From Octopus bimaculoides (Eukaryota): a stretch of DNA of 45,275 bases. The first letter of the stretch is position 1. The number at the start of each line of letters is the position of its first letter. The stretch lies in NCBI RefSeq assembly GCF_001194135.2, contig NC_068987.1:38467795-38513069 (forward strand), read 5' to 3'. Shown piece after piece: positions 14,635-44,955 of this stretch. Position numbers and translations under genes: made by a program. The notes under the pieces are model-generated. The model was given only the letters and a program-made list of their open reading frames with translations. It did not search any database and was not told the origin of the DNA.

Positions 14635-14740
14635 ATCACTACAATTGTTTTGACCCATCTAGCATAGATCCTTCATGGGTGGGATACTTAACAACTGGTT
14701 CAGGAGCACCTGGCGGTGTAGATGTGTCTCTTCAGGTGAT
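14635..14740 (-). ncRNA. Type I hammerhead-like motif with 77-nt stem II
   Basis: AUCAC-CUGAAGA-GAC.A.CAUCUA...UAGAUG.G.GUC-AAAA-CAAUUG-UA-GUGAU. 5-bp stem I, intact CUGANGA, palindromic stem III, GUA triplet. The only core change is G12>A. Confidence 0.65.
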
Positions 14741-15009
14741 AGATATAACTCATTAAAATAACAATTCTGCAAGGTATCTTCTCAGGTCGTGTAAAGAAAA
14801 GCAACAAATTAAAGGATATAGCTTCATTAATATAGAGGATCAATGATAAAAAATAAGATGCCAAAAAAAAAAAATGGACACACATTATAGCAATAAAAGT
14901 ATTAAATATAACTGTTAATGGATATGGATGTATACAATCCTTGGCATATGTTGTATGGTGCATATACACTCACTCATACAAACTACAAACACCCACATTT
15001 CTCTGTATA

Positions 15010-15874
15010 AACACATATCAAAAGGTTCCCAGACTAGTTATGTTTAATAAAAAATAACTTATTTACTTAAGTTTTAACATCAACTCCTTCGAAATAATCG
15101 CCTTGCACAGCAATACACTGGCCCCAACATTCCTGCCACTTTTGGAATCCAGTCTGGAACTCGTTTTCTGTAAGCAAGTCAAGGACCTTCCACGATTCAC
15201 ACTGGGTTTTAACAATGGTGACCTTTGAGCTGCATTTTCATCTTGGGAAAGAAATTGAAGTGTGCAGGTACTAAATCTGGCGAATAGGGTAGGTGTGGAA
15301 GTGATACCATGTTTTTGGTGAGAAACTCATGAGTGAGGAGAGCTTGGTGACAGGGTGCATTGTCATCATGAAGAATCCAGTTCTTCACACTCCACAGAAT
15401 GTCATTCCTCAAATGCTTCAAAATATCACAGAACTCTTGATTGACAGTTTGGTCCTGGGGGGCAATTTCACATTTCTGGTGGTGGGGTTTGATGCTTATG
15501 GCAGGTCTTCCAGCTCACTCATCATCTTCCAGCAACATTCTTCTGCTTTTAAAGCACCCATACTAATCGAAACATTGCCTACAACCCATTGCCTTATCAC
15601 CATATGTTTGCCAAAGCATGCTCAATGTCTATGTAGCAGACTTCCCAAATTAAATGCAAAATTTCGTGTTGGCTCTTTGTTCCTATCCATGACAGACTAC
15701 AGCATACACATGATCACAAAGACACAAATTTCACAACATGTGAAGTTAACACAGCAATGTCACTTACCACACTGCCTCATGAAGGTCACTGCTAGCTTTC
15801 ACTGTGCACATAAGTGTGCTGCCATCTGTTGGTGCATTACAGAATTAATCCGGGAACGTTTTGACATCACTTCA
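15010..15874 (-). mobile_element. Internally deleted mariner element
   Basis: HDDNAPCH...PHLPYSPDLVPAHFNFFPKMK (mariner DD34D region). Diverged TIRs TCAAAAGGTTCCCAGA / TCCGGGAACGTTTTGA, with TA after the right end. Confidence 0.85.
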
Positions 15875-16039
15875 TATTGTTACATCCTTGCCAAGGACAA
15901 CTTAATATTATCCCCAACCTCAGCTTTGTGTAGCTTTAAGAAATATTGAATCCCTCTTGTCTTTATTGACTAATTTCTCATTAGCACAGATCAAACAGAT
16001 GTTGGTATTTATTTGCACTTTCTATTTTATTGTTTCTAG

Positions 16040-16196
16040 GCATGTCGAGGAACCAAAATGGATGATGGTGTAGAAGTAGTTGATGGTTCTTCTTTCACTG
16101 AGGATGATAGTGTAGATGCTGTAGCTTCAGCTGATGTCATTATGAGAACAGTTCCAACTGAAGCTGATTTCCTATTTGCATATTCAACCACCCCAG
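16040..16196 (+). CDS. casp3/7-like: Effector caspase exon with catalytic Cys, linker and small-subunit start
   Basis: Acceptor TTTCTAG at 16033-39 and donor GTAA at 16197. Encodes ACRGTKMDDGVEVVDG...RTVPTEADFLFAYSTTP(G) and joins the previous exon to give FIQACRG. 157 nt, phase 0 to phase 1. Confidence 0.95.
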
Positions 16197-17001
16197 GTAA
16201 ATTACTGTCTCTTTGTTGACTTTACATAATCATAAATAAACTCCATTCATCTGAGACTGAAAGATAAAGTAGAAAGATCCATTACTTAACACCTAAGTTC
16301 CAGGTTTTCCTGGCACCTAAAATTGTAAATAATGTTTAATATATACTTTGTTTGATTGGATTCAAAGACAATTTATTTTAGGAGAATAAATCAGCAATTG
16401 AGTTATACATATCTTTGTTTATATAAGAATTTTTTTTTTTAAATCAGACAATGAATGTTCATTTCACATTTGAAATCACTAATCAATCTAGCAATCAAAT
16501 ATAATCTTTTAAAATTCAAGCCATTAGTTGCTGCTATTGTTGTTGTTTAACCCTAAGCCATCCATGATCAAACAGATCTTCATGCCACAATCTTCTCTAA
16601 TGTCATAAATTGCTATAAACAATGTGCCTCCCAGCAAAAAACATTTCAGTGAAATTTATAGTTGCTAATCTGGCATTGCATTAAGTCTTCTATCCAATTT
16701 TTTTTCTTCATTCTTTCTATTTGACATCCATGTTTTCATAGCAAGTATAAATTATAGTTCAAATTCTCCTTGAATTGGTTCAGCCTTAAATTTTCTCTGG
16801 GTTAATAGAGTAAGTGCTAGTAAAATGTCAAGAGCACTTTGACAATTAATCTCTGATAAATAAATAGTTGCTCCTACAACTTCATGGTGTGTGGGACATC
16901 ACTGAAGACTTGGTCTTCAACTAAAACAACAACTAGCAATATATCCTTCTGAAACACTTGTTATTTTTATAAAGCTGCCATTAGTTAACAGTGATGAAGT
17001 A

Positions 17002-19324
17002 TCTATATATATAAAAATGAGAATGTATGTCTGTCTGTGTGAATCCCTAAAACTCGAGAACTACACAACCAATTTCATTCAAATTTTACACATGCCTTAC
17101 TTAGGGTCCCGGTTGTGTTTTTGTCAAAAAAACTTTTTAACTTCTTGCATAGTTCGAGCCCACAGCAACATAATAGCTCCTCCACTATTTAAGTATTACG
17201 TGTCAAAAGTGAAACAAAAACACTCATGTCAAATACTTTCACTTTAAAAATGAAACTATTCCACTAACTGAAACAATCACATTTCGATACTGTAATGACA
17301 GTTACTTTCACTTTAATGGTGTATATATATGTATATATATATATAGAGAGAGAGAGAGAGATGTATATGTACACGTATATGTATAGATATATATATATAT
17401 AGATATAGATCTATATGCATACATGTATATGTATACATATGTGTAGATGTATATAGATATAGATGTACATGTAATATGTACACATATATACATATATATA
17501 CACCATTAAAGTGAAAGTAACTGTCATTACAGTATCGAAATGTGATTGTTTCAGTTAGTGGAATNNNNNNNNNNTATATATACATATATATACATGCATA
17601 CAGATATCTATACATATATACACCCATCACACACATTAGTCATTTGTTTTCTTATCCAAAACTACGTCAAAAGTACTGAATGGATCTTTATGAAATTTGG
17701 AAATTATATTCTATGCATAACGGCCATAACCCCCATGAAAATTCATATATTTTTGATGTTGATGAAATTTTAACCATACATATTACACACAAATAAAGTA
17801 ATGTTTCTAAAATTTCTTCTTCTTAGAAGTTACAAAGACCCCTTCATGGGGACTTCACACCCACAATTTAGTCATTTTTCCTAAGCAAAGACGAATACAG
17901 TTGTACTATTGGAAGCTGTAGGGTCACCCGACCATAACAGATGAGCATTATTTGTAATTCAACGGTACAACAGTGTAAGACTATCCATTGTGATTTCTGC
18001 AATGTGGTGCATATATTGTCAAGTAAATGAGATGCATCTTTGCCTCCACTGATTCACTTGCAAAGTGTTGAGTAAAATTATTTCGTTGCAGACCTCTTTG
18101 AGTCTTTTTGTTATCACTGCGACACATAGTCCCCAGTTGATAACATTGATTTCAAGGCCTTCCCAGATGAGTGACTGGTTGTTCTAAGACATTTATCGAT
18201 TATAAATTTTTTCTGCACAGTTACCTATCGGTATAGTGATCATTTGCAAACTCCAGAGGTGACACTTTCATTTCCCTTTACTCCAAGCGTCACACATTGT
18301 TATTTCAATTGGGTCATGCACTTCCAATTGCTATAGATCCGTAATGCATCTTACAGCTGTGCCTGTCACCTGTATGGTGAGGAATCCTACATTGGGGAGT
18401 AGTAACAACTAGGCTAGGGTAGCTGACTGATTATCATGATCATTCGTCTTTTCCTTTCCTGTAGCTTTGCTCTCTTTTTCAAACCCAGTGAACATACATA
18501 TGTTTTCTATTTCAAAGAAATTCAGACAATACATATTACACACTAGTTAATAAGATTCCCAACAATTCAACTTCTCTGGTTGACATTAATACACCCACCC
18601 CTAATAGGGGCCTTAACTCCCACATTTTTCAGGAGAAAAATCCTTTTAGGGTCCATGTAGTGTCTTAGGCCAAAAAAATTTTTAACTTCTTGCATAGTTC
18701 GAGCCCACAGTAATATCATATCTCCTCCACTATTTCAGTATTACGTGTCAAAAGTGAAACAATAGCATCACTCTACTGTAATGTCAGATACTTTCACTTT
18801 AACACTGAAACTGTTCCACTATTTCAGTATTACCTGTCAAAAGTGAAACAGTAACATGTCGCTACTGTAATTTCAAATACTTTCACTTTAATACTTTCAA
18901 TTTCATACTGAAACTATTAAAGTGAGACTATACTCTCACATATATACAAGCATACTATAAGACCCAAGTTAAAAACATTCCCAACAATTCAACTTCTCTG
19001 GTTGACATTAACACACCCATCCCCAATAGGGGCCTTCATTCCTACATTTTAGAGCTCCATGAGCTCCATTTTTCAGGAGCAAAATCCTTTTTACAGGTTC
19101 CAGAAGACTGAAATTTTGGAATATGCACATAAAGATCAATAGTATGGGATACATGTCTCATGATTAGAATTTTTTTAGGGTGTGTAAAGAGGGAAAGAAC
19201 CCTCATGTGCAATTTTCATGAAATTCGAATCATATGTATTCCAGTTCCTTACAGAAAATATAACACAAAATTCTCATTCTTCAATTGCATGTAACACGGG
19301 CAAGTATAACTATATCTCTGCTAG
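17002..19324 (+). mobile_element. Non-autonomous Helitron-like element with internal duplications
   Basis: A|TC 5' end (TCTATATATATAAAAATGAG..GTCTGTCTG) and CTAG|T 3' end preceded by a degenerate hairpin TTGCATGTAACACGGGCAA. Blocks 17130-17300 and 18670-18900 are duplicated, as are 18545-18660 and 18965-19095. Confidence 0.6.
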
Positions 19325-20625: not shown

Positions 20626-20823
20626 GGTGCTGGTGCCATGTAAGAACCACCCAGGCTACTCTGTAAGGTGGCTGGCATTAAGGACATCTAGCTGTAGAAA
20701 CCATGCCAAAACAGACAATGGAACCTAGTGCAACTCCCAGCCTTACCAGCTTCTGTCAAACCATACAACTCATGCCAGCATGGAAAACAGACATTAACTA
20801 CTGCTGTTGCTAATGATGATGAT
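20626..20823 (+). mobile_element. Diverged RTE-type tail
   Basis: GACATCTAGCTGTAGAAACCATGCCAAA...CCATGCCAGCATGGAAAACAGACATTAA...(GAT)n. Confidence 0.7.
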
Positions 20824-23229: not shown

Positions 23230-25970
23230 CATGTCTTTCCTTGCTAGGGATGTTGTAATATGTGTGTACATTTCTAACCCTAATCCCTCTCTATGCCTTA
23301 CTCTGTCTCTCTCTCTCTCTCTCCCCCTTTCGATTACCTCTCGCTTCACCAGGATTATAAACCTACGCTCGTTCCCCGATTTCTCTACTCAACCTCTGCC
23401 AAAGAATATAAATCTTCAGAATGATGTCCAGATACGAAATTTTCTGTCTTTTCAACCTCGTTCATACCCTTCTATTTATGCGCTTATCATTATACCTTAC
23501 TTAATGCTGTCTCTATTCTGTCCATTTCATTACCATGTCATCAAATTCATTCTTTTATTCAAGTTTATCACACAGTCACTTATTTCTATAATTCTGTCTT
23601 AGATTAGCTCTCAGATTTTTCAATTCTATATTACTATTATTAACATTTGCTGTCTCATTAAACTATGCTACACAAATCCCCAAAGAATATCTTTCCCCTC
23701 GTGTTCTGACCACTAACCCTAATCCCTCTCTATGCCTTACTCTGTCTCTCTCAGTCTCAATCTCTCTCTCTCTCTCTCCCTTTCGATTACCTCTCGCTTT
23801 GCTAGGACTATAAACATACGCTTTCACCCTGATTTCCCTACTCGATCTCACTCTCTCTACCTCACTCTGCTCATGGTACACCCGCCTTCCCCCACCCCCA
23901 CCAGTACTGGAAGTTCCTATCCTCTCCACCAGTAACAGAAGTTTCTATCCTCTCCACATGTACCAGAAGTTCCTATCCTCTCCCATCCTTTGGTTGTCTC
24001 CCATGAACACTTCTAAAGGCTTCATGCCACCCCACCCCTACTTAGGGTTTATCTCCTCCTATGTAAAGTAGTGATCATATAGTGCAAAAATATGATAGTG
24101 CAGTGTATACAGGTTGAATTGAAGGCTATTGTTTGTTTGTTTATGAATTCTGCCAAATGCGAGCTTTCTTTTCAGGTACATGGTGCTGCTGTCCCCCGTC
24201 CCAGGGTCTCATAGGCCCATACCTCCCACACCCTCAGGGTTGGCACTCTCAATGTCAACACACAGAAAGGTAGGTTTGGTGAGATTGTTGAGATGCTTGA
24301 ACAGAGATATGTCAATATCTGCTGCCTCCAAGAAGTAAGGCGCAGAGGAGGTTTCGCTAGGTTCCTCACAGGCAAAGAACACAGGTACAAGATTTTCTGG
24401 GCAGGGAACATAGACAGGGTAAGGGGCGTGGGTATACTTCTTGTGGAGAAATGGGTGGATAAGGTAATCGAGGTAATCAGAGTATGCGATAGAATACTTA
24501 AGATTAGTGCTTCATCGTGGGTTAGCAACCATTATTTCAGCCTATGCCCCTCAGCTGGGACTACCCGATGGACAGAAAGACCGATTTTATGAGACCCTCT
24601 TGCAGACTACCTTGTTAACGAATGACAGGGACCTTCTCTTTGTGGCTGGTGACTTGAATGGACATGTTTGACAACGTACCGGGGGCTTCCATCGCGTACT
24701 TGGAGGCTATGGTTTTGGTTCCCTCAATGAGGAGGGAACCAGGCTGCTGGAGTTCTTATTTCTTTATTGCCCACAAGGGGATAAACATAGAGGGAACAAA
24801 CAAGGACAGACGAACGGATTAAGTCGATTACATCGACCCCAGTGCGTAACTGGTACTTAATTTATCGACCCCCGAAAGGATGAAAGGCAAAGTCGACCTC
24901 GGCAGAACTTGAACTCAGAACATAACGGCAGACGAAATACCGCTATGCATTTCGCCCGGCGTGCTAACGATTCTGCTAGCTCGTCGCCTGGAGTTCTGCG
25001 ATGCAAATGACCTCATGGTTTGCAATACTAACTTTAGGAAACCTGCCAGTCACCTATTCACCTACTGTTCTGGCAGAGACACTAGCCAAATCGACTACAT
25101 CCTCGCCAGAAAAAGGGAAAGATGGCTGCTTATAAATGCCAAAACCTTCCCATGCGAAGAATGTACCCCACAACATAGACTAGTAGTTAGTGACTTCAGG
25201 ATCAGAGCTAAGTGGCTGCCCAGAAGATGACCAGCATGGAGGAGAAGGGTCTGGAAGCTTAAAGATCCCACAAATGGACAGAGATTTAGAGACATATTAC
25301 TCGAAGCCTTTGACGAAATAGAAGGGGATATAGCTTCACACAATGTAGAAGACAGCTGGAGGTTTCTACAGGACAACCTGCTGAGGGCCAGTGACCAGAT
25401 CTGTGGATAATGCAAAGTCCCCTCTTGACCCAAAATAACGTGGTGGTGGAACAATGTTGTTGACATTTTCTCATTAGAGAAAAGAAACAGGCTTGAAAGG
25501 ACTGGAAGAATGGTGGTAGCAAGGAATTGTATCAGACTGCCAGAAGGGAAGCTAGGAGACAGGTTTATTTAGCCAGAGGGAAGCAGATAAGAAAATATTT
25601 GTCAATGTTCTGCGCCGTGAGGACCAAAGACTTGAGGTATTTCGTGTTGCAAGAGAGTGTGTGAGAGAGAATCGTGATGTCGTAGGAGAGAAATGTGTCC
25701 GCATAGATGATGGTTCACTCACACTAAGTGTGGCTGCAAAGAGAGAGGTTTGGAGACGTCACAATGAAAAGGTTGCTCAATAAAGAGAATGAATAGGAGA
25801 AAGAGAGTCTGCCGAATGTTGACCCAACACAGGGACCAGCTATCCGACTTGACAGTACGATGGTAGATAAAGCAATCATGAGTATGAAGACAGGGAAAGC
25901 CCCTGGCCCATCAGGAATCACCGCAGAGATGCTCAAAATATCTGGCTGTGTCGGCTATAGCCTAGTCACC
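23230..25970 (+). mobile_element. RTE-clade LINE, 5' part (5' UTR repeats, AP endonuclease, start of RT), 3'-truncated
   Basis: LRVGTLNVNT...ICCLQEV...GVGILL...DRILK; SQIDYILARK...QHRLVVSDF; SMKTGKAPGPSGITAEMLK. Upstream are ~130-bp direct repeats (23275-23400 and 23715-23850) and a ~27-bp unit x3 (23895-23985). The 5' boundary is uncertain. Confidence 0.88.
24757..24987 (-). mobile_element. SINE nested in the RTE endonuclease ORF
   Basis: 10-bp TSD CTGGAGTTCT at 24747-24756 and 24988-24997. Removing the insert restores ..GTRLLEFCDANDL. Confidence 0.9.
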
Positions 25971-29404: not shown

Positions 29405-30025
29405 TGGTGCCGTATAAAAAAAACCATTTGCACCGAAAGCATGCGCAGGTGGCACATAAAAACCACCTACTACACTCTCGGAGTGGTTGGCGTTAGGAAG
29501 GGCATCCAGCTGTAGAAACTCTGCCAGATCAGATTGGATTGTGGTGTAGCCATCTGGTTCGCCAGTCCCCAGTCAAATCTTCACAAGCAGGAAGGTCTTC
29601 GCAAGCATGTATATATATATATATATATCATCATCATCATCATCATCATCATTTTCCATGCTAGCATGGGTTGGACGATTTGACTGGTGGGACGTAAAAA
29701 GCACCATTTGAGCGCGGTCGTTTCCAGCTCCGCCTTACTGGCACTTGTACCAGTGGCATGTGGACAAAACATTGGACTGACTCCTATGCAGGTGGCACAT
29801 AAAAACACCATTTGAGCGTGGCCGTTGCCAGTACTGCCCGACTGGCCCTCGTGCTGGTGGCATGTAAAAAGCACCCACTACACTCTCGGAGTGGTTGGCA
29901 TTAGAAAGGGCATCCAGCTGTAGAAACTCTGCCAGGTCAGATTGGAGTCTGATGTAGCCATCTGGTTTGCCAGTTCCCAGTCAAATCGTCCAACCCATGG
30001 AAAGCGGACATTAAATGATGATGAT
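29405..30025 (+). mobile_element. Cluster of RTE-type tails (two direct copies with an inverted tail at ~29628-29690 between them)
   Basis: AGGAAGGGCATCCAGCTGTAGAAAC occurs at ~29495 and ~29905. (CAT)n-CCATGCTAGCATGGGTTGGACGATTTGACTG lies inverted between them. Confidence 0.75.
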
Positions 30026-32271: not shown

Positions 32272-33079
32272 NNNNNNNNNNNNNNNNNNNNNNNNNNNNN
32301 NNNNNNNNNNNNNNNNNNNNNNNNNNNNNNNNNNNNNNNNNNNNNNNNNNNNNNNNNNNNNNNNNNNNNNNNNNNNNNNNNNNNNNNNNNNNNNNNNNNN
32401 NNNNNNNNNNNNNNNNNNNNNNNNNNNNNNNNNNNNNNNNNNNNNNNNNNNNNNNNNNNNNNNNNNNNNNNNNNNNNNNNNNNNNNNNNNNNNNNNNNNN
32501 NNNNNNNNNNNNNNNNNNNNNNNNNNNNNNNNNNTTCTTCAATGAATATATTATATAAAATATTGTAAAATATTGAACATTATTGAACTTTGGAAGGGAC
32601 ATTATGGTGGTAATAATAAACACACGCACTGGTTCAGTCCTTTAATAAAGTGGAGCTGACAGCTCCACTTTATTAAAAGACCGAACCAGTGCGTGCGTTT
32701 ATTATTACTGGCATGTGTTTATTACTTCTTTCAACACATGAATTCACATCAAGAATCTTGGAAACCAAATACAAATACAAGCTATGATAAGCTCCAGCCA
32801 AGCTAGCAAGACATTGAAGAACACTGTGTTCTGCTGTCTAAAAATCAAAATAACCATCAGATAACTCCACTTTATTAAAGGACTGAACCAATGCATGTGT
32901 TTATTATTACCACCATAATGCCCCTCCCAAGATTCAATAGTATTTCTTTCAACACACGAATTCTCATTAAGAATCTTGCAAACCAAATACAGATACAAAC
33001 TATATCAAGCATTATTATCAAATTAAAAAACAGAGAGATCTAATGGATACTAATTAGTTTATTAATTAATCAACATATT

Positions 33080-33182
33080 CACCTACAATTGTTTCGTTTC
33101 ACAGACAAAATTAAAAGGACAAAACACACATATATATATAATTTTGCATTCTAAATACTTTGTATGGGAAATCATTAGGGTG
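33080..33182 (-). ncRNA. Hammerhead-like motif with 76-nt stem II (left arm)
   Basis: CACC-CUAAUGA-UUUC...GAAAC-GAAA-CAAUUG-UA-GGUG. Confidence 0.55.
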
Positions 33183-33309
33183 TACAAGAGACAATAAGGA
33201 TTACATTAGGATACATTTGAAATACTCAGAATATAGTCACATAATAAACATGTCTATACATTCTGAGTATTCCAAATGAATCCTAATGTAATCCTTATTG
33301 TCCTTTGTA

Positions 33310-33412
33310 CAACCTGATCATTTTCCATACAAGGTATTTAGAATGCAAAATTATATATTCATATATGTTTTGTCATTTTAATTTCGTTTGTGAAATGAAA
33401 CAATTGTAGGTG
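33310..33412 (+). ncRNA. Hammerhead-like motif with 76-nt stem II (right arm)
   Basis: CAAC-CUGAUCA-UUUUC...GAAAU-GAAA-CAAUUG-UA-GGUG. The two arms' core mutations complement each other to give CUGAUGA. Confidence 0.5.
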
Positions 33413-33863
33413 AATATGTTGATTAATTAATAAACTAATTAGTATCCATTAGATCTCTCTGTTTTTTAATTTGATAATTATACATTATATTTTGAAGAGA
33501 TATTTCTTCAATGAATATATTATATAAAATATTGTAAAATATTGAACATTATTGAACTTTGGAAGGGACATTATGGTGGTAATAATAAACACACGCACTG
33601 GTTCACAATTATACATTTAATAATAAAAATAAGTCGTCTTATACCAGTCTTAGTAAATTTATTAGGGACTTAAAGGACAAGAATAAAATGTTTACTATGG
33701 AGTGGGAATTAATAAGCAGGGCTAGTGCCTATAAAGTTGGCAATGCCATTTGTTTTCTTTGCGTAGAAGAATATGTTGATTAATTGATAAATCAATTAGT
33801 ATCCATTAGATCTCTCTGTTTTCTAACTCGATAATAATGTTTGATGTTTTACCATATACAACA

Positions 33864-34027: not shown

Positions 34028-34080
<53 letters not shown>

Positions 34081-34160
34081 AAAAGAAAATGGAGAAACTG
34101 ACATATAGACATCAATTTATTAGAAACTAATACAATTCTGAATAATATCAAACTCAATTT

Positions 34161-34256
34161 CACCTACAATTGTTTCCCTGCCCAATTAAATCAGTTTGGG
34201 AAATTAAATTAAATTTCCATATCAAATATCATTAATTGGGTATTTCATCATGGGAA
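34161..34256 (-). ncRNA. Hammerhead-like motif with 69-nt stem II
   Basis: UCCC-AUGAUGA-AAUA-CCCAAUUAA...UUAAUUGGG-CAGG-GAAA-CAAUUG-UA-GGUG. Confidence 0.45.
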
Positions 34257-34836
34257 GAATTTGACAGAAGGTGCTACATTCTGATGCGTTGTCTGATTAT
34301 GCTCATGAAATTAGTAACAGGAATAATGGAATTAAAAAATTTGAAAATTATAATGTACCTTCTGATAAGAATAATACTATTTGGCTCATTATTCCATTCG
34401 CTAAGCAAATTAAGAACAATTTAGTTGGATCTTTATGCAAACTATTTTCTAAACATTCTACCAAAAAAAGATATTATGATGTAATTAATGCCAGTTTTCT
34501 CTGTGTTGCTTTTTCTATCTTGAAGAATATGTCCCAGATTATTTCTTCCCTTAACAAGAGGAAATTATCAAATTTTTATAACAATAATTACCCAATTAAA
34601 TGCAACAATAATACTCTAGGAAACAATGTTAGTGAAAAATGTAAAAATAATTCTTCTAATGTACAAGGGGAAACAACCTACTTTAAATTCCATCATAACC
34701 TGAAGAACAGAAGTAATGCTCAAATAACAATCATACTAAATCTGATAAATTAAATCACAATAGTAATATAAATATAAATGAAAATATATGTTGTGATTGC
34801 AAAGATAGAAATGATTGTTTAATAATTATTGTCAAC

Positions 34837-34991
34837 AGTGGTTGGCGTTAGGAAGGGCATCCAGCTGTAGAAACTCTGCCAAATCAGACTGGAGCCTGGT
34901 GTTGCCATCCGGTTTCACCAGTCCTCAGTCAAATCGTCCAACCCATGCTAGCATGGAAAGCGGACGTTAAACGATGATGATGATGATGATG
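34837..34991 (+). mobile_element. Young RTE-type tail inserted into the PLE endonuclease region
   Basis: Nearly identical to 11566-11709. It interrupts ..YCQ|QKNVVY. Confidence 0.85.
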
Positions 34992-36170
34992 AACAAAAAA
35001 ACGTAGTTTATAGATGTAAAGTGAATTCTGAAGGTAAGAATTTCTTTTACATTGGTGCTATGCAAGACTATATAAAAAAATGCATCGCTAATCACAATTA
35101 TACATTTAATAATAAAAATAAGTCGTCTTATACCAGTCTTAGTAAATTTATTAGGGACTTAAAGGACAAGAATAAAATGTTTACTATGGAGTGGGAATTA
35201 ATAAGCAGGGCTAGTGCCTATAAAGTTGGCAATGCCATTTGTTTTCTTTGCGTAGAAGAATTATACCGAATCTTAAATTCCAAATGTAGACTCCTTAACT
35301 CAAAAAGGGAGGGTGGGATATCCTGTGTTCACACCTATAAACATGTTTTCAAAAACTACCATTAAGTACAATGTAAAAGTTATCAGGCAGTATCTCAGGA
35401 TTAATATACTAACAATTATAACTATAAAGAGATATCATATCAATATTAAAATATAAGATAAATGGTAAATATGGACATAAGGTTTTATTTATAGGTAGTC
35501 ATATTATATAAAGGTTAAAAGTATTTTAAGTACATATCTTAGGAATATGTAATCAATAATTTTTTTTTTTTTGAATATTAATTCAATGATGGTTTGAATT
35601 TTTATTAATTTCATTAATTTTGATTTATTAACATTTTTCCTCAAATAAGCTCATGTATATCTGTTCACACTGTTATGTAAACAAGTATATTGTGCACAAA
35701 TATTGATGACGTAATATTTAGCTATGGAAATAAGTAAGCAGTTTTGATTCGTCATCATCTGGTAGCTTTCAACACATTAACACACATGCACAAATACATA
35801 ATGAAAATATTACACATACATAACTATGGTTTTTAAAATAGAAAATTATAATAATAATTTATTATTTAACTATAATTTCTAGATTTCCAGGTGACTTATA
35901 ATTAGATTTCTTAAGTGATTAAATATCTTAATGACATTTCAATCTATCATAAGTAATTGTGTAATTTAGGAATAATGTGTTTTAGCTTCTAGTTTAAAGT
36001 AATTGTATCAGAATATCATTTAAGCTAACTAATTGATATCTTGTTTTTTCAATACATTATGCATGTATGCACCCAAATGCATAAAACAAATTTGCATTTA
36101 CATATATATAAGTAACATTTTTTTTAAATACATTGATTGCTGATATGCACTTATTTGAGTCTATCAAGGG

Positions 36171-36266
36171 TCGATGAAATACCCAATTAACGATATTCAA
36201 TATGGAATTTTAATTTAATTTAATTTACCAAATTGATTTAATTGGGCATGGAAACAATGGTAGGTG
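36171..36266 (+). ncRNA. Decayed hammerhead-like motif with 73-nt stem II
   Basis: UCGAUGA-AAUA-CCCAAUUAA...UUAAUUGGG-CAUG-GAAA-CAAUGG-UA-GGUG. The 5' strand of stem I is lost. Confidence 0.4.
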
Positions 36267-36399
36267 AAATTGAGTTTGATATTGTTCAGAATTGTATTAT
36301 GTTCTAATAAATTGATATCTATATGTCAGTTTCGCCATTTTCTTTTTCTCATAGATAAAAAATAAAAAATAGTTACCCAGATCCATCAGTGCAAAGCTA

Positions 36400-37365: not shown

Positions 37366-38389
37366 CGATGAAGCTACACCATTGACTACATGGCGACCTC
37401 CTTCACCAATACATCAACATACTTTCTCATGTGAACTCTTTAGCAGTTGTTTCAACACACCAATGTGGGACAGTGCAAATTAGCGTGGGATGGTCCACAA
37501 GGGTTTACATCCTCATGGTGTGGACTGGGCAACATTTTGACTTCGGTGTGAATGCCTAAAAACTCAAATACAATGCAATCGTTCTCCAATTTTCATCATG
37601 CATCACCGGCGGACATGATCCTTTTCAATCCTTCATGATAGCTCATTAGTGACTGTTGTTATATGCAGGGGGACAACTCTAAGTAAACTCTCTGCTCACA
37701 ATAAGACTCATGCTGGTTATTTTCAGTACATATATACTTGTATGCTGCTTACTTTTACCATCATTACAACTTCCCAATTATCTGTCTGCCTTTCATCATA
37801 TCTTTTCACTGTGAACTGCTAAAGATTCAAAGCAGTATTTGTGAACTGAAATCAAACTCTTCATGTCTTAATTTTTCGTTACCTGAAGTCAATTTCAGAA
37901 TGGTCGTACACTGTAAGCACACAACAAATACATTCCCTTAACTTTACTTTTTCAAGTAGGTATTATATTGCCATTGTTGAACGTAACAGTCATACTTCTC
38001 TCCAAAAACATAGCTCCATTTGCTGTTGAATAAAATAAACTCGTAGAGAGGAAGTTTCAACATCTTCCTTACACCATTTATGTGGCTGATTCTGACAAGA
38101 AATTTCACTTTCATGTAAGACATCTATATTTTGTAGTCATTATCCGTAATCTACTCTCAAAACACTTCAGCAGCTCTACTTCGCATCATTTGCAAACTTG
38201 TATGTTCTATGATCATTAAAGAGCAACGACCTCTACAATAACCAGTGTTCAATTTGGTTTTCTGTTCTTAGGTTAATCAGAAACAGATTGTCATGCTACT
38301 TATAAACCTTCTCAGTAGTTCAATTATTTGGTGAAAAAAATACCACCAAAGCAACTTAAACTGTCCAAAGGACAGGTGTGTTTGCTAGT

Positions 38390-38627: not shown

Positions 38628-38681
<54 letters not shown>

Positions 38682-38810: not shown

Positions 38811-38812
38811 AA

Positions 38813-39550: not shown

Positions 39551-39629
39551 GTCGAAAGACCCTTTCTGTTATTTATTCATATGTATTCGTATATGTACAA
39601 AATTTTTTTTCCTTCTATTGTATAGCCAA

Positions 39630-40600
39630 AATTCTAGCTTTCTTGTTTTTGTTTTTGTTCCTGTTTTCCTTTTTGTATACATTTGTTTGCATTCCTCAGA
39701 AGCTTAATGCTTTTAGCTTAAGTCCCTGGCACCTGCTGGATTTGAGTAGTCTCAGAGATAAAAGGGCAAAATTACAAGGACTTTCCAGACTCTAACTGAT
39801 GAGGAAATCGGCTGTGAATGATCTGTGTATCTTGTTTTTGTCATACTATCATCTATTTTCCCGCATTTTGTGTTTTGTTGGTTTCCATTTGTTGTGTTCT
39901 TTCTGTCCTACCTTTGATTTATCCATGTGACGCTCTGTACAACCTGTTGCTTACTTTGTCAGAACAAGATTACTAGTTACAAGTAGATTTATATATAGTT
40001 AACACTTGATAATAGTTTAAAAAAAGCACTTAAATATTGGTTACAACTAGTAGGTTAAAATATGATATTGGACGAACATAACGTTATGAAATAATAATAC
40101 AAGTGCAACAGAAAATGAATTATACATATACAATGATAAAATGCCTTTCAGCTATACAGCAAAAGGAAAATAATTGTACAATTACAACATAAATAAATAA
40201 CAAAAAAGGTCCATCGACTATCAGATGAATGTAGTAAGCTGGCGCAAAGGTAAAATGGAAAATCTTAACACACAGATGAACATGACCAGTCTGAAAGGTG
40301 GCTGGTCAAAGAGGATAACAGTGCCTTGGCCAGACAGCGATCACGTGGTAGGAGAGGGAAGGAGTTAAAGAGGACAGAGGGACTAAGGAATAGGAGAGAG
40401 GGGAAAGAAATCAGAGGAACTAAAGAATGAGAGAGAGGGGGAGAGATAGAGGCAGAGAGAGAGAAAAAACGGTACAAGGAAGGTAAGTGATGAAGGAAAG
40501 CAAAGGAATTGAAGAATAAGCAGGAGGGAGGAAAAGGGATTAAGGAATACAAGAGAGGGGAAAATGAAATCAGAGGGACTGAGGAATGAGAGGGAGGGGA

Positions 40601-40634
<34 letters not shown>

Positions 40635-41039
40635 GAGAAAGTGAGGAAGAGAGAGGGAGAGTTGTACATAATATTCAAGGGATATCTTTTTTTAACAAAG
40701 TGAACAACAGGTTGTACAGAGCATCACATGGATAAATCAAAGGTAGGACAGAAAGAACGCAACAAACAAAAACCAACAAAACACAACATGCGGGAAAATA
40801 GATGATAGCATGACAAATGGCAAACAGGACAAAAACAAGATACATGGATTGTTCGCAGCTGATTTCCTCATCAATCAGAGTCCAGAAAGTCCTTGTAGTT
40901 TCACTCCCTATCTCTGAGTCTACTCGAATCTGGTAAGTGCCAGAGACTTAAGCTAAAAATGTTAAGCTTCTGGGAAAGGCAAATGAATGTATACAAGAAC
41001 AAAAACAGGAACGGAAACAAAAATGAGAAAGCTAGAATT
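39630..41039. repeat. Inverted repeat with ~340-355 bp arms around a ~710-bp spacer containing a GA-rich tract
   Basis: 39630-39970 is the reverse complement of 40684-41039, visibly diverged with an indel. Confidence 0.85.
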
Positions 41040-41339
41040 ATACATGTATTTCAACACTAAATATGAAAATCATAGATAATTTCATTTTGTTATAGAACAA
41101 ATCTTTTGGATCACATTTTAAACATATGCAATACTAGCTTAAAAGCCACACACCGTGTGGACTTTTAATCTAGCTCTTGTGGAGGGCTAATTGGGCCTGT
41201 AGCCCAAAACTAAAGAGAGCAATAATAATAAAGCATTTATTGGTACCCAACCAATATGGTATTGCTTTAAATTCAGTTTAAATGAAAAACTTGTAACTTC
41301 ACAGACTTTTGGAGTCCTTTTAAAATTTGAATACAAGAT

Positions 41340-41356
41340 GTGTGTGTGTGTATGTA

Positions 41357-41395
<39 letters not shown>

Positions 41396-41600
41396 TGTGA
41401 CTTTGTGTCTGTATTTGTCCCCCACCACTTGATAACAGGTGTCGCCATGTTTATGTTCACATAACTTAACGGTTCGGTAAAGTAGGCCAATAAAAAAATA
41501 CCAGGCATAAAAAAAGAAAGAATCGATGTTGATCTGTTCGATTAACATTTTTCAAGTCAGTGCCCCAGCATGGCCACAGTCTGATGACGGAAAAAGATTT
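41340..41600 (+). mobile_element. 3' half of octopus-type SINE
   Basis: TTTGTCCCCCACCACTTGATAAC...CCCCAGCATGGCCACAGTC. Confidence 0.75.
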
Positions 41601-41629
41601 TAAAAACCACTAAATTCCATACAAAACTT

Positions 41630-41854
41630 AAAGCTAAGGGAGGTAACTCTTGTACCTCTCAGTTACTTTACCTGCTAAAAATATCAACCCAAATGCTTTT
41701 AAATCAGATCCCAAAGCTGGATGTTCAAGAACCAAATGAAGGGCAGATTTTCAATCCTGGGATCATCTTGATCCCAAAAAGATATAATATACCTATGTAG
41801 AGCGAATATAGACTGAGATACAGACAGACAGAATTACACTTTTATTAATATAGA
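41630..41854 (-). mobile_element. 5' end of a second Helitron-like non-autonomous element
   Basis: Minus strand begins A|TCTATATTAATAAAAGTGTAATTCTGTCTGTCTG, like the 17002 terminus. No 3' end recognised. Confidence 0.4.
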
Positions 41855-41953
41855 TATTATAGCTCAGAACAGTGCATTACACCCACACAAATTATATTAC
41901 AGCCACATTCAATACTTTACAGCTTGGAATAATTTATCACAGTCAATTACAAC

Positions 41954-42086
41954 AAATAACAATTCAATCTACAGAATATATTAAATAACAATTCAATCTA
42001 CAGAATATATTAAATAATAATTCAATCTACGAAATATATTAAATAATAATTCAATCTACGAAATATATTAACAGTTCAATCTACAA
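41954..42086. repeat. ~28-29-bp minisatellite x4-5
   Basis: AATTCAATCTACAGAATATATTAAATA(C/AT)A repeated. Confidence 0.85.
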
Positions 42087-42541
42087 TCCTGATTTATAAA
42101 TACTCAACATACAAATGTTTGATTTTGATTTTGCACTATTCTTACACCAAACTTATCCAATTTTTATCAATAATAATTGAGCCAAAGTTAACAGAAACAG
42201 TGAAGAAAGATTAAATACATCTAATCTATTTTGGAATGGTGGATTGTGAAGAACATAAAGCTAGAAATAAAAACATGTAAATATTGGCAGGTTCAATGAA
42301 TATATCTATTATGATTACTTGTGTCAAGAAATTTTTTATATAGACTCTCCAAAAATTATGGTTGTTGTTTGTTGAACTAATGTTATGTCAATGAGTTAAT
42401 TATTTCTTTTTTATTTGTAGTTTGTTCACTAATTAATGCAGCCTATTTGTTTTTAAATAATTTCAAATAAATTACAGTTTAAAATGTATTCCTTACAGCT
42501 ATAAAAACTTATGCTTAATTTTTGTTCATTTCTAATTTTAG

Positions 42542-42789
42542 GTTATTATTCTTGGCGTAATAATGAGGAAGGTTCCTGGTTTATCCAGGCACTATGTATT
42601 ATTTTGGAGAACCATGGAAAAGAAATGGAGCTAATGCACATGTTAACATTGGTCAATCACATTGTGGCTTACGACTTTGAATCATGTACCAATGAAGATT
42701 TCACATCTAAAAAGAAACAAATGCCATGTATTGTTTCAATGTTGACCAAATATGTTTACTTCCGACCCAAAAAACAAGAAATAATTTAA
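42542..42789 (+). CDS. casp3/7-like: Effector caspase terminal coding exon (small subunit)
   Basis: Acceptor TTTTAG ending at 42541. Phase 1 matches the 16196 donor (G|GT = Gly). Encodes GYYSWRNNEEGSWFIQALC...KKQMPCIVSMLTKYVYFRPKKQEII, with TAA at 42787-89. Confidence 0.95.
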
Positions 42790-42826
42790 AATTACTGGTA
42801 ATGTCAGCTGAAGTGGCAGCAATACA

Positions 42827-42832
<6 letters not shown>

Positions 42833-42874
<42 letters not shown>
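42833..42874 (+). repeat. Pure A42 tract 43 nt after the caspase stop codon
   Basis: Counted directly. Confidence 0.95.
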
Positions 42875-42877
<3 letters not shown>

Positions 42878-43384
42878 GATCCTATAACTCTAGCATTCAT
42901 TTATCTTTTATTTTCAAAGAATGGTTTATTTTATAATAGATATTCAACAAAATCAGAATCACTTTTTATGAAATAAAAAAAATACACATTTCCATGAACA
43001 TTAAACAAGGTATTAGTTTACATTTTTCAAACTTGATATTATATACATTTCTTTTTGTTTGCTTTTTCTTTTGCATTTTTTTCCCCAGTTTAATGTAAGC
43101 CATAGAAAATGCCTTCTTAAAATTCCACAAAATTTTGTGGACTTTAGAGTTCTTGTTTGTGTGTGTGTATGGATGTGCATTTATGTTTTATATTTGTGTG
43201 TGTGTGTATGTACATATATATCTCTTTATACACTCACAAATACATTGCTATACATGTTATTTAAGTTTACATTTGACCATATGTGTATGTATATATTGAT
43301 TTACATATCTATCCATAAAAATACATTCACATAATACATCAAGCATATATGTATGTACACTCTCACACGTGCGTGTGTGTATAA

Positions 43385-43747
43385 ATATATATATTAAAGT
43401 AGAAAAGAAAAGGCAAACGGTTTAGCAAGAATTGACAAGGACATTTAATTTAGCTGTATAATAAAAGGTTTACATAGTCTCTAATAGCTGTTTCTAGAAT
43501 ATCCCTGCTATTGGAACATCATGCTGAGCAAGGATTCCATAGGCCAAGTATCCCATCATTGGAGAGAGATAGTTAAATATATGTAATGGTGAAAGAATAT
43601 TCCCCATCAATGATAATTGTTGTGATCTATTATATCTAGAAACAACTGTTAGAGATTATGTCATGCTTTTATTATATACTTAAATTAAATGTCCCTGTCA
43701 AGTCTTGCCAAACTGTTTGCCTTTTCTTTTCCACTTCAATATATATA
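43385..43747. repeat. Foldback with ~117-bp arms and ~130-bp spacer
   Basis: 43385-43501 is the reverse complement of 43632-43747. Confidence 0.85.
43478..43567 (-). ncRNA. Decayed hammerhead-like motif with 61-nt stem II
   Basis: UCUCU-CCAAUGA-UGGGAUA...UAUUCUA-GAAA-CAGCUA-UU-AGAGA. The opposite arm has GAAA-CAACUG-UU-AGAGA, so the consensus stem III is ACAGCUGU. Confidence 0.45.
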
Positions 43748-43950
43748 CCTACCAGCTCAAGAGGAAGCCACTTCTAGCTGCTTTAGAAAGGCAGTTACAA
43801 AATCATATCTTCAACTGCAGTTTCAACCGGAATTTTGGTGGCATATCAATTTGAGTGCTCAGAGTGTATACTTATTTCCTGGAGTTATCCTGATGAAAAC
43901 TCCTTGTATCCTTTATATAATGTATATATGTGCATATATTTATGATATAT

Positions 43951-44233
43951 GTTGTTGTTTGTTCCTTCTCGAGCCATACCTGACTCATAAGGGCTGGTTT
44001 CCCAGTTTCATTGGTGTATAGGTTCCCCAGCTGGACGGGATGCTGGCCCGTCGCAGGTGAGCTGTTAGATGTAGGAGGAAAGAGTCAGCAGAAGTTCACT
44101 ATTACCTTCTGCTGGAGCCACATGGAGCTTAGGTGTTTCGCTCAAAAACACACATTGCCTATTCTGAGATTTGAACCCCCTGATCCCTTCACCATGAGTC
44201 TGCTGCTCTAACCACTAGGGCATGTGCCTTCAC
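43951..44233 (-). mobile_element. tRNA-derived SINE
   Basis: Minus-strand head GTGAAGGCACATGCCCTAGTGGTTAGAGCAGCAGACTC...GGTTCAAATCTC, with a (CAA)n-type tail. Confidence 0.75.
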
Positions 44234-44281
44234 ATTTATGATATATATTTAAGTATATATATTATTATATATGTTTGTGTC

Positions 44282-44319
<38 letters not shown>

Positions 44320-44642
44320 TGTATGTATATATGTATGTATGTAAATATAATTATGATTCAGTTGAATTAGGTACTTAAATTCAAGCACCTTGCTAGTTTG
44401 GTGTAATCTGCATACCCCCAACAATATTATTTGAATATTGAATATTAAGACTCCTTGTAGGGGTATTTGTACCCAATATTCCTGTCATGTATGCAGGCAA
44501 TGCAGTCCATCTAAGTGAAGATATCTGCTCTTGATAATTCAGTCATATACTTTTTATAAAGTTATTTCTATAGTATTTCCAATGTACAGATACCAAGTTA
44601 GGTGAACAGAATATAAATAAGTAACAAAGATGTACAGGTGTC

Positions 44643-44726
44643 AATTTATTACAGCTGTTTCAAGAGGCTCCATTTAATTGATTACATTATATCAGTTTGA
44701 AAGAAACCATTCTCATCAGATGAATT
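44643..44726 (-). ncRNA. Type I hammerhead-like motif with 51-nt stem II, core intact
   Basis: AAUUCAU-CUGAUGA-GAAUGGUUUC...GGAGCCUCUU-GAAA-CAGCUG-UA-AUAAAUU. All core nucleotides present, palindrome ACAGCUGU, GUA triplet, stem I 6/7. Confidence 0.7.
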
Positions 44727-44864
44727 CATAGACTTCAAACATAAAGGTTAAACCATTTTTTTAACAAATTTACATCAATAATGGAAACAATGTAAATATT
44801 TTGGCTTCCATCATTGATGTAAATTTGTTAAAAAATGGTTTTTCTTTTATGTTTGAAGTATATG

Positions 44865-44955
44865 AATTCATCTGACGAGAATGGTTTCTTTCAAATTGAT
44901 GTAATGTTTTCATTAATCAATTAAACGGAGCCATTTCAAATGGCTATAATGAATT
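44865..44955 (+). ncRNA. Hammerhead-like motif with 58-nt stem II, GAAA/stem III damaged
   Basis: AAUUCAU-CUGACGA-GAAUGGUUUC...GGAGCCAUUU-CAAA-UGGCUA-UA-AUGAAUU. Stem I is 7/7 and stem II pairs over 10 bp. Confidence 0.5.

What the first reader, a model, noticed from the sequence alone, without database searches (positions are those of the whole stretch)
14635..44955. A recurring class of 'long-stem-II' minimal hammerhead ribozymes in four unrelated sequence families
Seen: eight motifs (14635-, 33080-, 33310+, 34161-, 36171+, 43478-, 44643-, 44865+) share one layout. It is a short stem I, CUGANGA or a 1-2 nt variant, a 51-77 nt stem II closed by up to 10 bp, GAAA, a palindromic stem III (ACAAUUGU or ACAGCUGU), UA/UU, then stem I. 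Stem I pairs differ between families (AUCAC/GUGAU, CACC/GGUG, UCUCU/AGAGA, AAUUCAU/AUGAAUU) yet stay complementary, which is covariation. Established: PLEs carry minimal type I hammerheads with palindromic stem III that are thought to cleave as dimers, and standard descriptors cap stem II length. Inference: this is a PLE-derived ribozyme class with an expanded stem II domain that motif searches would miss. The domain could supply tertiary contacts or a protein/RT-binding site. I cannot tell whether it is already catalogued.
Basis: partly seen in the sequence, partly recalled or inferred. Interest (0 to 1): 0.85.

Follow-up and report, generated by a model that had tools for sequence, protein, structure and literature searches.

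The report
Decayed retrotransposon hammerheads with long helix II
The eight motifs are real but mostly mutated relics of the minimal hammerhead ribozymes carried by Penelope-like retrotransposons; their one unusual feature is a helix II of 51-77 nt instead of about a dozen, and no cleavage activity has been shown.

Summary
All eight motifs sit at the stated coordinates and have the type I hammerhead layout. The layout is short stem I, CUGANGA, a long helix II domain, GAAA, a palindromic stem III and U-H. The pattern is far above chance: the 3' box occurs 13 times against 1.8 expected.

Only one copy (44643-44726, minus strand) has a fully intact core. The others carry 1-3 disabling substitutions, and the 34161/36171 pair has no verifiable 5' half. 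By sequence there are five families, not four.

The context fits Penelope-like elements (PLEs):
- Copies lie head-to-head as 5'-truncated inverted pairs or as solo copies.
- Elements end in (TA)n.
- One pair flanks a truncated open reading frame (ORF) whose homologues show the Hydra-clade PLE signatures.

Two outside Hydra-clade elements carry ordinary minimal hammerheads with helix II of 10-14 nt. The long helix II is therefore a trait of these families, not of the clade.

Rfam finds none of these motifs, but it also misses the canonical PLE hammerheads. Its failure is therefore not specific to helix II length.

Verdict: a new variant of a known kind, present here only as dead copies. Interest is moderate to low, and function is untested.

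The parts
14635..14740 (-). M1, family B, solo copy. Layout: AUCAC / CUGAAGA / 77-nt helix II domain (10-bp base with 1 mismatch) / AAAA (G12->A) / CAAUUG-U-A / GUGAU.
33080..33182 (-). M2, family A, left arm of inverted repeat 32884-33605. Layout: CACC / CUAAUGA (G5->A) / 76 nt / GAAA CAAUUGU A GGUG.
33310..33412 (+). M3, family A, right arm. Layout: CAAC / CUGAUCA (G8->C) / 76 nt / GAAA CAAUUGU A GGUG.
34161..34255 (-). M4, family A', an inverted 5'-truncated arm (34070-34249) that ends in (TA)n. Layout: CAUGAUGA / 68 nt (9-bp helix behind a 4x4 internal loop) / GAAA CAAUUGU A GGUG. The stem I 5' strand is not verifiable.
36171..36266 (+). M5, family A', arm 36173-36357. Layout: C-GAUGA / 73 nt / GAAA CAAUGGU A GGUG. 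Homology to M4 starts at GAUGA.
43478..43567 (-). M6, family C. Layout: UCUCU / CCAAUGA / 61 nt / GAAA CAGCUAU U AGAGA. The tail ends in (TA)n.
43639..43655 (+). M9, the 3' box of the opposite arm of inverted repeat 43386-43747 (GAAACAACUGUUAGAGA). The upstream half is not homologous to M6.
44643..44726 (-). M7, family D, the only copy with a fully intact core. Layout: AAUUCAU / CUGAUGA / 51 nt (7-nt deletion relative to M8 and M10) / GAAA CAGCUGU A AUAAAUU.
44865..44955 (+). M8, family D. Layout: AAUUCAU / CUGACGA / 58 nt (10-bp base, z = -5.1) / CAAA UGGCUAU A AUGAAUU. It is an arm of inverted repeat 44611-44987, next to (TA)n.
2617..2742 (+). M10, a solo family D copy, about 75% identical. 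The 3' box is GAAACAGUUGUAAUGGAUU, the core 1 box is destroyed, and the 3' end is the same as in M7 and M8.
34361..35362 (+). 5'-truncated, decayed Hydra-clade PLE ORF (linker plus GIY-YIG endonuclease). It lies between the M4 and M5 arms and is interrupted by a SINE-like insertion at 34836-34994.
33603..33845 (+). Second endonuclease (EN) C-terminal fragment. Bases 33603-33772 are 100% identical to 35092-35261. The fragment is joined directly to about 80 nt of the family A tail (33763-33845, 88-89% to the arms).
6395..6438 (-). E1, a canonical short-helix-II PLE minimal hammerhead. Layout: GGACCA / CUGAUGA / G-A-UCACA-AAAG-UGUGA-C / AAAA.. It lies about 300 nt downstream of a PLE-type ORF (6741-7607, minus strand; CX4CxxC linker plus GIY-YIG).
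1796..1841 (+). E2, a second copy of the canonical minimal hammerhead. Layout: CUGAUGA / G / GUCACA-GAAG-UGUGAU / GAAA GAACU C UGGCUG. The repeat is 88.7% identical to E1.

Best explanation
The motifs are neutral-decay relics of type I minimal hammerhead ribozymes from the 3'-terminal (pseudo-LTR) region of Penelope-like retrotransposons. At least families A and A' appear to belong to Hydra-clade elements, which insert into (TA)n.

Each copy is a severely 5'-truncated unit made of a short upstream stretch, the hammerhead, and a 38-215 nt tail. Copies were often deposited head-to-head with a second inverted truncated copy, as is typical of PLE integration.

In the active master elements the RNA would fold as follows:
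- a 4-7 bp stem I;
- the CUGANGA and GAAA core;
- a helix II closed by 7-10 bp and extended into a 51-77 nt hairpin domain.

Stem III is only a palindrome (ACAAUUGU or ACAGCUGU) and cannot fold on itself. Two hammerheads would therefore have to pair through it, for example those of tandem pseudo-LTR copies. That gives an 8-bp intermolecular helix III, with cleavage after GU-A or GU-U.

My inference is that the long helix II is an exaggeration of the already enlarged helix II of PLE minimal hammerheads. It would act as a thermodynamic clamp that compensates for the missing loop-loop contacts and the short stem I.

**What is shown:** motif identity, stems, repeat architecture, and the PLE ORF next to one pair.

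**What is inferred:** dimeric cleavage, the role of helix II, and the assignment of families B, C and D to any particular PLE clade.
For: **Motif enrichment and anchored stems**
- Enrichment of the boxes and the descriptor.
- Anchored stem I and helix II statistics.
- The helix II ends pair in every family.

**Consensus behaviour**
- The family D majority of three copies restores a perfect 3' half, GAAACAGCUGUAAUGAAUU.
- A hypothetical family D consensus homodimer is predicted to adopt the same double-hammerhead topology as the canonical L003 hammerhead.

**Repeat architecture**
- Inverted pairs are 71-90% identical: 32884-33605, 43386-43747, 44611-44987, and 34070-34249 with 36173-36357.
- Solo copies M1 and M10 exist, and family D copies share one 3' end.
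- (TA)n sits at the ends of the A', C and D units.

**PLE coding remnant**
- The window ORF remnant is colinear with residues 480-693 of a 696-aa protein.
- The conserved endonuclease residues are kept in the window copy.

**Literature**
- Hydra-clade features and (TA)n targeting; inverted 5'-truncated copies: PMC8557442.
- PLE minimal hammerheads with an enlarged helix II, a short helix I, a palindromic stem III, and pairs on opposite strands: PMC4209133.

**Controls**
- Canonical PLE minimal hammerheads occur in the same window downstream of a second PLE ORF.
- They also occur in outside Hydra-clade elements: L003 at 2459-2506 and L028 at 1799-1836. In L028 the hammerhead lies about 50 nt before a (TA)n end.
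Against: - Only M7 has an intact core, so no family consensus could be built from more than three copies.
- Family A' has no verifiable stem I 5' strand or C3-U4. It also has a 4x4 internal loop between the core and helix II.
- Family A has an unpaired C next to G12.
- The G10.1-C11.1 pair is present only in families B and D.
- The helix II domains of families B and C are no more stable than shuffles.
- The unpaired nucleotide after A9, typical of PLE minimal hammerheads, is absent from B and D.
- No direct tandem pair, which dimeric cleavage would need, is present in the window.
- The link between the ORF and M5 is uncertain: 810 nt separate them, against 135-185 nt in the outside elements.
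- Families B, C and D have no ORF nearby.
- The two outside Hydra-clade elements have short helix II.
- PLE minimal hammerheads are known to cleave poorly in vitro (PMC4209133), and cleavage was not needed for insertion in vitro (PMC11167929).
Confidence: 0.75

Rival explanations
1. The elements are non-autonomous retrozyme-like elements, short PLE-derived units that spread on their own, rather than 5'-truncated ends of autonomous PLEs. The hammerhead would process tandem transcripts into small circular RNAs.
For: - Units are short (about 180-360 nt), carry no ORF, and recur.
- Family A looks like an internal-deletion derivative. Its tail also follows an endonuclease ORF end at 33763-33845.
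- Animal retrozymes are proposed to derive from PLE pseudo-LTRs (bioRxiv 10.64898/2026.07.22.740005; PMC7229834).
Against: - The window holds no direct tandem repeats of any unit. All pairs are inverted.
- The hammerheads are of the minimal type. They lack a foldable helix III and the loop 1/loop 2 contacts typical of retrozymes (PMC7229834).
Confidence: 0.12
2. The hammerhead cores are real relics, but the 51-77 nt between the boxes is not a selected helix II domain. On this reading the master copies were already non-cleaving hammerhead-derived sequences, and the insert is neutral expansion or serves another purpose, such as a 3'-UTR hairpin recognised by the reverse transcriptase.
For: - Families B and C have helix II domains no more stable than shuffles.
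- The junctions in A and A' are non-canonical.
- No motif is shared between the helix II domains of different families.
- Outside Hydra-clade hammerheads are short.
- Hammerhead cleavage was dispensable for PLE insertion in vitro (PMC11167929).
Against: - Five unrelated families keep a similar spacing of 58-77 nt, taking the undeleted length for family D.
- All five pair at the base of helix II directly next to both core boxes.
- Stem I compensation is kept in four families.
- One copy still has a perfect core.
Confidence: 0.2
3. The inverted structures are foldback or MITE-type DNA transposons with TA target sites, and their arms only resemble hammerheads.
For: Three structures are inverted repeats over their whole length (362-722 bp) and lie in TA-rich flanks.
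Against: - Solo copies (M1, M10) share the same 3' end but have no inverted partner.
- Arms differ in where they start, which indicates 5' truncation.
- The core boxes and compensating stems recur in unrelated sequences.
- A PLE ORF lies between one pair.
- Inverted 5'-truncated copies and (TA)n targeting are documented PLE traits (PMC8557442).
Confidence: 0.04
4. The motifs are chance matches in AT-rich, repeat-rich DNA.
For: - A scan of metagenome contigs with CTGANGA-N45-75-GAAACAATTGTAGGTG returned 11 loci (4 distinct sequences). None has a complementary stem I, so the boxes alone do arise by chance in very large data.
- Some weak look-alikes exist in the window at 16951, 31038 and 37441.
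Against: - Shuffle controls: 13 against 1.76, 1 against 0, and 5 against 0.22.
- The product of the stem I probabilities for the four families is of order 1e-8.
Confidence: 0.02

Closest known systems
Minimal type I hammerheads of Penelope-like elements (Cervera & de la Pena 2014, PMC4209133; Lunse et al. 2017, cited in PMC6765202)
   Same: - Type I topology with CUGANGA and GAAA cores.
- Short open stem I of 4-7 bp with no loop 1.
- Enlarged helix II.
- Palindromic stem III that cannot fold alone, which implies dimeric action.
- Many heterogeneous families per genome.
- Mostly dispersed truncated copies, sometimes in pairs on opposite strands.
   Different: - Helix II here is a 51-77 nt domain rather than 6-8 bp with a small loop.
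- The unpaired nucleotide after A9 is missing in families B and D.
- G10.1-C11.1 is not kept in A, A' or C.
- The stem III inner palindrome is 6 nt.
- I could not read the Lunse 2017 or Arkhipova 2017 papers, nor the supplements of the 2014 paper. Prior description of long helix II variants is therefore not excluded.
Hydra clade of C-terminal EN+ PLEs (Craig et al. 2021, PMC8557442)
   Same: - Endonuclease domain with CxxC and CxH around the conserved E and N.
- Homologues with RWK and DKT motifs and a CxCX5C linker.
- Insertion into (TA)n.
- Inverted 5'-truncated copies.
- A hammerhead close to the 3' end, as in L028.
   Different: - Described Hydra elements have "canonical" hammerheads. The two outside elements I recovered have helix II of 10-14 nt (L003, L028).
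- The window copy is a broken 5'-truncated ORF.
- Only families A and A' are physically next to it.
"HHR_half_core" cases in Naiad PLEs (Craig et al. 2021, methods)
   Same: CUGANGA and GAAA boxes separated by an unusually long distance (35-50 nt) in a PLE 3' UTR.
   Different: Those cases were reported as not fitting stem/loop descriptors. Here stems I and II and a palindromic stem III are present, and the spacing is 51-77 nt.
Metazoan non-LTR retrozymes (PMC7229834)
   Same: Short non-coding units with a type I hammerhead, probably mobilised by PLEs.
   Different: Retrozymes are direct tandem repeats with canonical hammerheads, usually with loop-loop contacts and a foldable helix III. None of that is seen here.

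Membership tests
Hammerhead ribozyme, type I | Conserved core C3-U4-G5-A6-N7-G8-A9 ... G12-A13-A14 ... U16.1-H17 | tested here: met
   The core is met in full only in M7. M1, M2, M3 and M8 each have one core substitution, M6 has two, and M4 and M5 lack C3/U4. The two-copy and three-copy family comparisons are compatible with an intact ancestral core in A and D.
Hammerhead ribozyme, type I | Helices I and II flank the core at the right junctions | tested here: met
   Stem I has 4-7 contiguous pairs in families A, B, C and D (P = 0.004-0.028 each). The helix II base pairs in all families. This is not met for stem I of family A'.
Hammerhead ribozyme, type I | Helix III closes the junction | tested here: inconclusive
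   There is no intramolecular helix III. An 8-nt palindrome (ACAAUUGU or ACAGCUGU) could form it only between two copies. Cofolding of a hypothetical family D consensus gives that topology.
Hammerhead ribozyme, type I | Site-specific self-cleavage after H17 | not testable with these tools
   This needs transcription and cleavage assays or mapping of RNA ends.
Hammerhead ribozyme, type I | Match to the Rfam hammerhead covariance models | tested here: not met
   There is no hammerhead hit even at E <= 10. The control is uninformative, because the canonical PLE minimal hammerhead in L003 is also missed.
PLE minimal hammerhead (PMC4209133) | Short helix I (4-5 bp), enlarged helix II, palindromic 15.2-16.2 / loop 3 | tested here: met
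   Stem I is 4-7 bp, the helix II base is 7-10 bp, and the palindromes are exact in M1, M2, M3, M4 and M7.
PLE minimal hammerhead (PMC4209133) | Unpaired nucleotide between A9 and 10.1, and a conserved G10.1-C11.1 pair | tested here: not met
   Families B and D have G10.1-C11.1 but no extra nucleotide. Families A, A' and C lack G-C at that position. The canonical copies E1 and E2 in the window do have the extra nucleotide.
PLE minimal hammerhead (PMC4209133) | Located in the pseudo-LTR or terminal region of a PLE, often as truncated dispersed copies or pairs on opposite strands | tested here: met
   Head-to-head pairs are present, and a Hydra-clade ORF remnant lies between M4 and M5. There is no ORF near families B, C or D.
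Hydra-clade PLE (PMC8557442) | C-terminal GIY-YIG endonuclease with CxxC and CxH around the conserved E and N | tested here: met
   In alignment A1 the window copy keeps Y..YIG..K..H..C.LC..E..N..E..C.H. Three homologues give weak Pfam GIY-YIG matches.
Hydra-clade PLE (PMC8557442) | RWK motif, DKT instead of DKG, CxCX5C linker | tested here: inconclusive
   The motifs are present in homologues P0025, P0091 and P0001. The window copy is 5'-truncated, and its linker is disrupted by a SINE-like insertion.
Hydra-clade PLE (PMC8557442) | Insertion into (TA)n | tested here: met
   The A', C and D units end at (TA)n. The outside elements L013 and L028 do the same.
Non-LTR retrozyme (PMC7229834) | Direct tandem repeats of about 150-400 bp, each with a canonical type I hammerhead | tested here: not met
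   Self-BLAST shows only inverted pairs and solo copies.

The most novel reading that the evidence does not exclude
A lineage of PLE hammerheads has expanded helix II into a size-constrained domain of about 58-77 nt. The domain would be needed for folding, dimerisation or protein recruitment, and it has escaped cataloguing because descriptors cap loop 2 and the covariance models do not cover minimal hammerheads.
Probability: 0.3. Interest if true: 0.55.

Novelty: new variant of a known kind. Interest (0 to 1): 0.35.

Why it matters
If the long helix II is a selected feature, current hammerhead counts in such genomes are underestimates. It would also give a natural test case for how minimal hammerheads without loop-loop contacts gain stability, or recruit the element's protein, through helix II.

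It would extend the known structural range of PLE ribozymes, whose role in retrotransposition is still unclear. As seen here, however, the copies are dead relics of a known element class. The immediate value is mainly for annotation: these inverted repeats are PLE debris, not microRNA-like hairpins or MITEs.

Tried and rejected
**Rfam**
- Neither the gathering-threshold scan nor the E <= 10 scan gave a hammerhead hit.
- The many mir-297-type hits are (TA)n/(CA)n microsatellites.

**Pfam**
- ORFs and stop-masked frames gave nothing for the PLE ORFs, apart from a weak DDE_3 match for a mariner remnant.

**Word-based protein searches**
- Two timed out.
- One found nothing.
- One returned four unnamed proteins.
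- One returned only the query itself.

**Other searches that led nowhere**
- Related contigs L005-L012 come from a sequencing series with about 69% nucleotide identity in the ORF. They have decayed motif-like stretches but no significant similarity to the window's arms.
- L013 and L015 show no clear hammerhead in the flank held.
- The metagenome scan for the family A type pattern gave only chance hits without stem I.

**Candidates rejected as chance**
- 43824(-), 28708(+), 35350(-), 16951(+), 31038(-) and 37441(-).

**Not attempted**
- I did not build a covariance model. A variable 50-77 nt insert in helix II would be penalised as insertion.

**Papers not held**
- Lunse 2017 and Arkhipova 2017 could not be read, nor the supplements of the two key papers.

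**Organism**
- It could not be identified.

Full report
**1. Observation**

- M1 (14635-14740, minus) is the cleanest outside family D. It has a 5-bp stem I, a perfect CUGAAGA, a helix II whose base is 10 bp with one mismatch, the palindrome ACAAUUGU, and A at H17. Position G12 is A.
- M7 (44643-44726, minus) is the only copy with every core nucleotide intact. Its stem I has one mismatch.
- M2, M3 and M8 each carry one substitution at an essential core position (G5, G8 and G12 respectively). M6 carries two.
- M4 and M5 align to each other only from GAUGA onward (36173). Their stem I 5' strand and C3-U4 cannot be verified.
- The spacing between the two core boxes is 51-77 nt. The 51-nt value in M7 comes from a 7-nt deletion relative to M8 and M10.

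**2. Chance**

- The 3' box GAAACARYTGTWR with up to one mismatch occurs 13 times against 1.76 expected. No shuffle out of 100 reaches 13.
- The two-box pattern occurs once against zero.
- A full descriptor (core with up to 2 mismatches, stem I of at least 4 bp, helix II base of at least 6 bp, near-palindromic stem III) gives 5 hits against 0.22.
- With the core boxes as anchors, contiguous stem I pairing has P = 0.013 (family B), 0.028 (A), 0.013 (C) and 0.004 (D) against a window null.
- The helix II base duplex has P = 0.006 (B), 0.006 (A'), 0.002 (D), 0.14 (A) and 0.11 (C).
- In every copy the ends of the inter-box segment pair with each other.
- The segment as a whole is more stable than shuffles only in families A, A' and D.

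The hammerhead reading is therefore sound, but the copies are heterogeneous and mostly damaged.

**3. Families and extra copies**

- Self-BLAST and arm-to-arm BLAST separate five groups. Families A (M2, M3) and A' (M4, M5) share only the 18-nt GAAACAAUUGUAGGUGAA.
M9 is the 3' box in the other arm of the family C repeat. M10 is a solo, 75%-identical family D copy near 2617-2742.
- With three family D copies, the majority sequence of the 3' half is a perfect GAAA-CAGCUGU-A-AUGAAUU.
- The window also holds two canonical short-helix-II minimal hammerheads, E1 (6395-6438, minus) and E2 (1796-1841, plus). E1 lies about 300 nt downstream of a PLE-type ORF (6741-7607, minus) that has a CX4CxxC linker and a GIY-YIG motif.

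**4. Context**

- M2/M3, M6/M9 and M7/M8 are arms of inverted repeats that are 82%, 71% and 83% identical. M4 and M5 are 90%-identical arms 1.9 kb apart.
- In each pair the hammerhead 5' ends face the centre. Units end at a common 3' end, in three families at (TA)n. Solo copies also exist.
- This pattern fits 5'-truncated retroelement copies deposited head-to-head, not a transposon defined by terminal inverted repeats.
- Between M4 and M5, on the M5 strand, lies a broken ORF (34361-34678 plus 34997-35362). It is colinear with residues 480-693 of a 696-aa protein.
- An exhaustive profile search gave 1977 relatives.
[quoted passage not shown] These are the features that define the Hydra clade of PLEs, which also targets (TA)n (PMC8557442, section 11).
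- The same paper describes inverted 5'-truncated copies and the assembly problems they cause.
- PMC4209133 already reports pairs of minimal hammerheads 100-700 bp apart on opposite strands.

**5. Outside controls**

- Contigs encoding two Hydra-clade relatives carry ordinary minimal hammerheads.
- L003 at 2459-2506 has a 4-bp helix II with a 5-nt loop, an extra A after A9, and stem III ACAUUAUGU.
- L028 at 1799-1836 has a 10-nt inter-box segment whose UGA/UCA ends could form about 3 bp, and stem III ACCUAAGGU. It lies about 135 nt after the stop codon and about 50 nt before a (TA)n end.
- The position near the 3' end therefore matches the window, but the long helix II does not.
- Rfam misses the L003 hammerhead as well. 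Its silence on the window is therefore not evidence for a special class.

**6. Mechanism**

- Stem III cannot fold within one molecule.
- Cofolding a hypothetical family D consensus with itself gives two helix II hairpins, an 8-bp intermolecular helix III and paired stem I strands. The canonical L003 motif gives the same topology.
- This fits the dimer model for PLE hammerheads (PMC4209133, PMC6765202).
- The window holds no direct tandem pair. A transcript through an inverted pair would fold as a long hairpin instead. These loci are best seen as dead copies.
- That the long helix II stabilises a hammerhead lacking tertiary contacts is my inference, not a shown result.

**7. Gaps and assembly**

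- No motif touches a gap, and the flanks of each gap do not overlap. Most gaps abut (TA)n.
- The right flank of gap 32272-32534 is an exact copy of 33504-33605.
- Bases 33603-33772 are an exact copy of 35092-35261. Everything else in this nest is at least 10% diverged, so local assembly redundancy or a recent duplication is possible.
- The motif calls do not depend on either duplicate.

**8. Verdict**

The PLE origin is supported. The "ribozyme class" claim is untested and rests on decayed copies. The helix II expansion is a variant of a known kind. Its prior description cannot be excluded, because the key supplements and two papers were not available.

Noticed in passing
window 6395-6438(-), 1796-1841(+), ORF 6741-7607(-): Two canonical short-helix-II PLE minimal hammerheads lie in a repeat that is 88.7% identical between copies. 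One is about 300 nt downstream of a 288-aa ORF that ends in a CX4CxxC linker and a GIY-YIG endonuclease (NVVYSI..TYIGET..R..EH). This is a second, different PLE lineage in the window.
   Followed up: partly
window 32535-32636 = 33504-33605; 33603-33772 = 35092-35261: Two exact duplicates of 102 and 170 bp sit in a region where other repeats are 10-30% diverged. The first abuts assembly gap 32272-32534. They suggest local assembly redundancy or a very recent duplication or conversion.
   Followed up: partly
window 33766-33790: A chimeric junction. The endonuclease ORF is cut at ...GTAGAAGAAT and continues as the family A tail, which normally follows GTAGGTGAAT at the hammerhead cleavage site. 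The 8-of-10 microhomology hints at template switching or microhomology-mediated joining.
   Followed up: no
window 34836-34994 (also 11560-11709, 29445-29582, 29853-29990, 20627-20797): A roughly 150-bp SINE-like repeat is inserted into the PLE ORF and is 98% identical to the copy at 11560-11709. Contig L009 from a related data set has the ORF uninterrupted at this point.
   Followed up: partly
window ~15000-15900(-): A mariner/Tc1-type transposase remnant (..HDDNAPCH..PYSPDL..) with a weak DDE_3 match lies just upstream of M1 on the same strand.
   Followed up: partly
window 24293-25230(+), 3226-3831(+): LINE debris: an apurinic-type endonuclease region (CLQEV..GVGILL..QIDYIL) in the GC-richer block, and a weak RVT_1 match flanked by a 92% inverted repeat (3159-3269 and 4883-4997).
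   Followed up: no
window 5696-5995, 9482-9874, 17258-17564, 32610-32708: Further whole-length palindromes (97%, 83%, 81% and 93% self-complementary) all lie next to assembly gaps and/or (TA)n. The centre of 9482-9874 holds a hammerhead-like string (AAGGAC CUUGAAGA ..14 nt.. GAAA GUAUACU A GUCCUU) without a helix II, and its stem I pairing comes from the repeat arms themselves.
   Followed up: partly
window 37490-37568(+): A sub-threshold match to the HDV ribozyme model (30.4 bits against a gathering score of 50, E = 1.4). HDV-like ribozymes occur at LINE 5' ends, so it may deserve a look.
   Followed up: no
window 16904-16963(+): A perfect CUGAAGA lies 47 nt upstream of GAAACACUUGUU, but there is no complementary stem I or helix II. 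It is either chance or a very decayed copy.
   Followed up: partly
L003 1-30 and 2503-2532: The contig encoding the Hydra-clade protein P0091 has identical 30-nt ends, meaning a tandem or circularly permuted assembly of a roughly 2.5-kb unit. The hammerhead lies between the stop codon and the next start codon.
   Followed up: no
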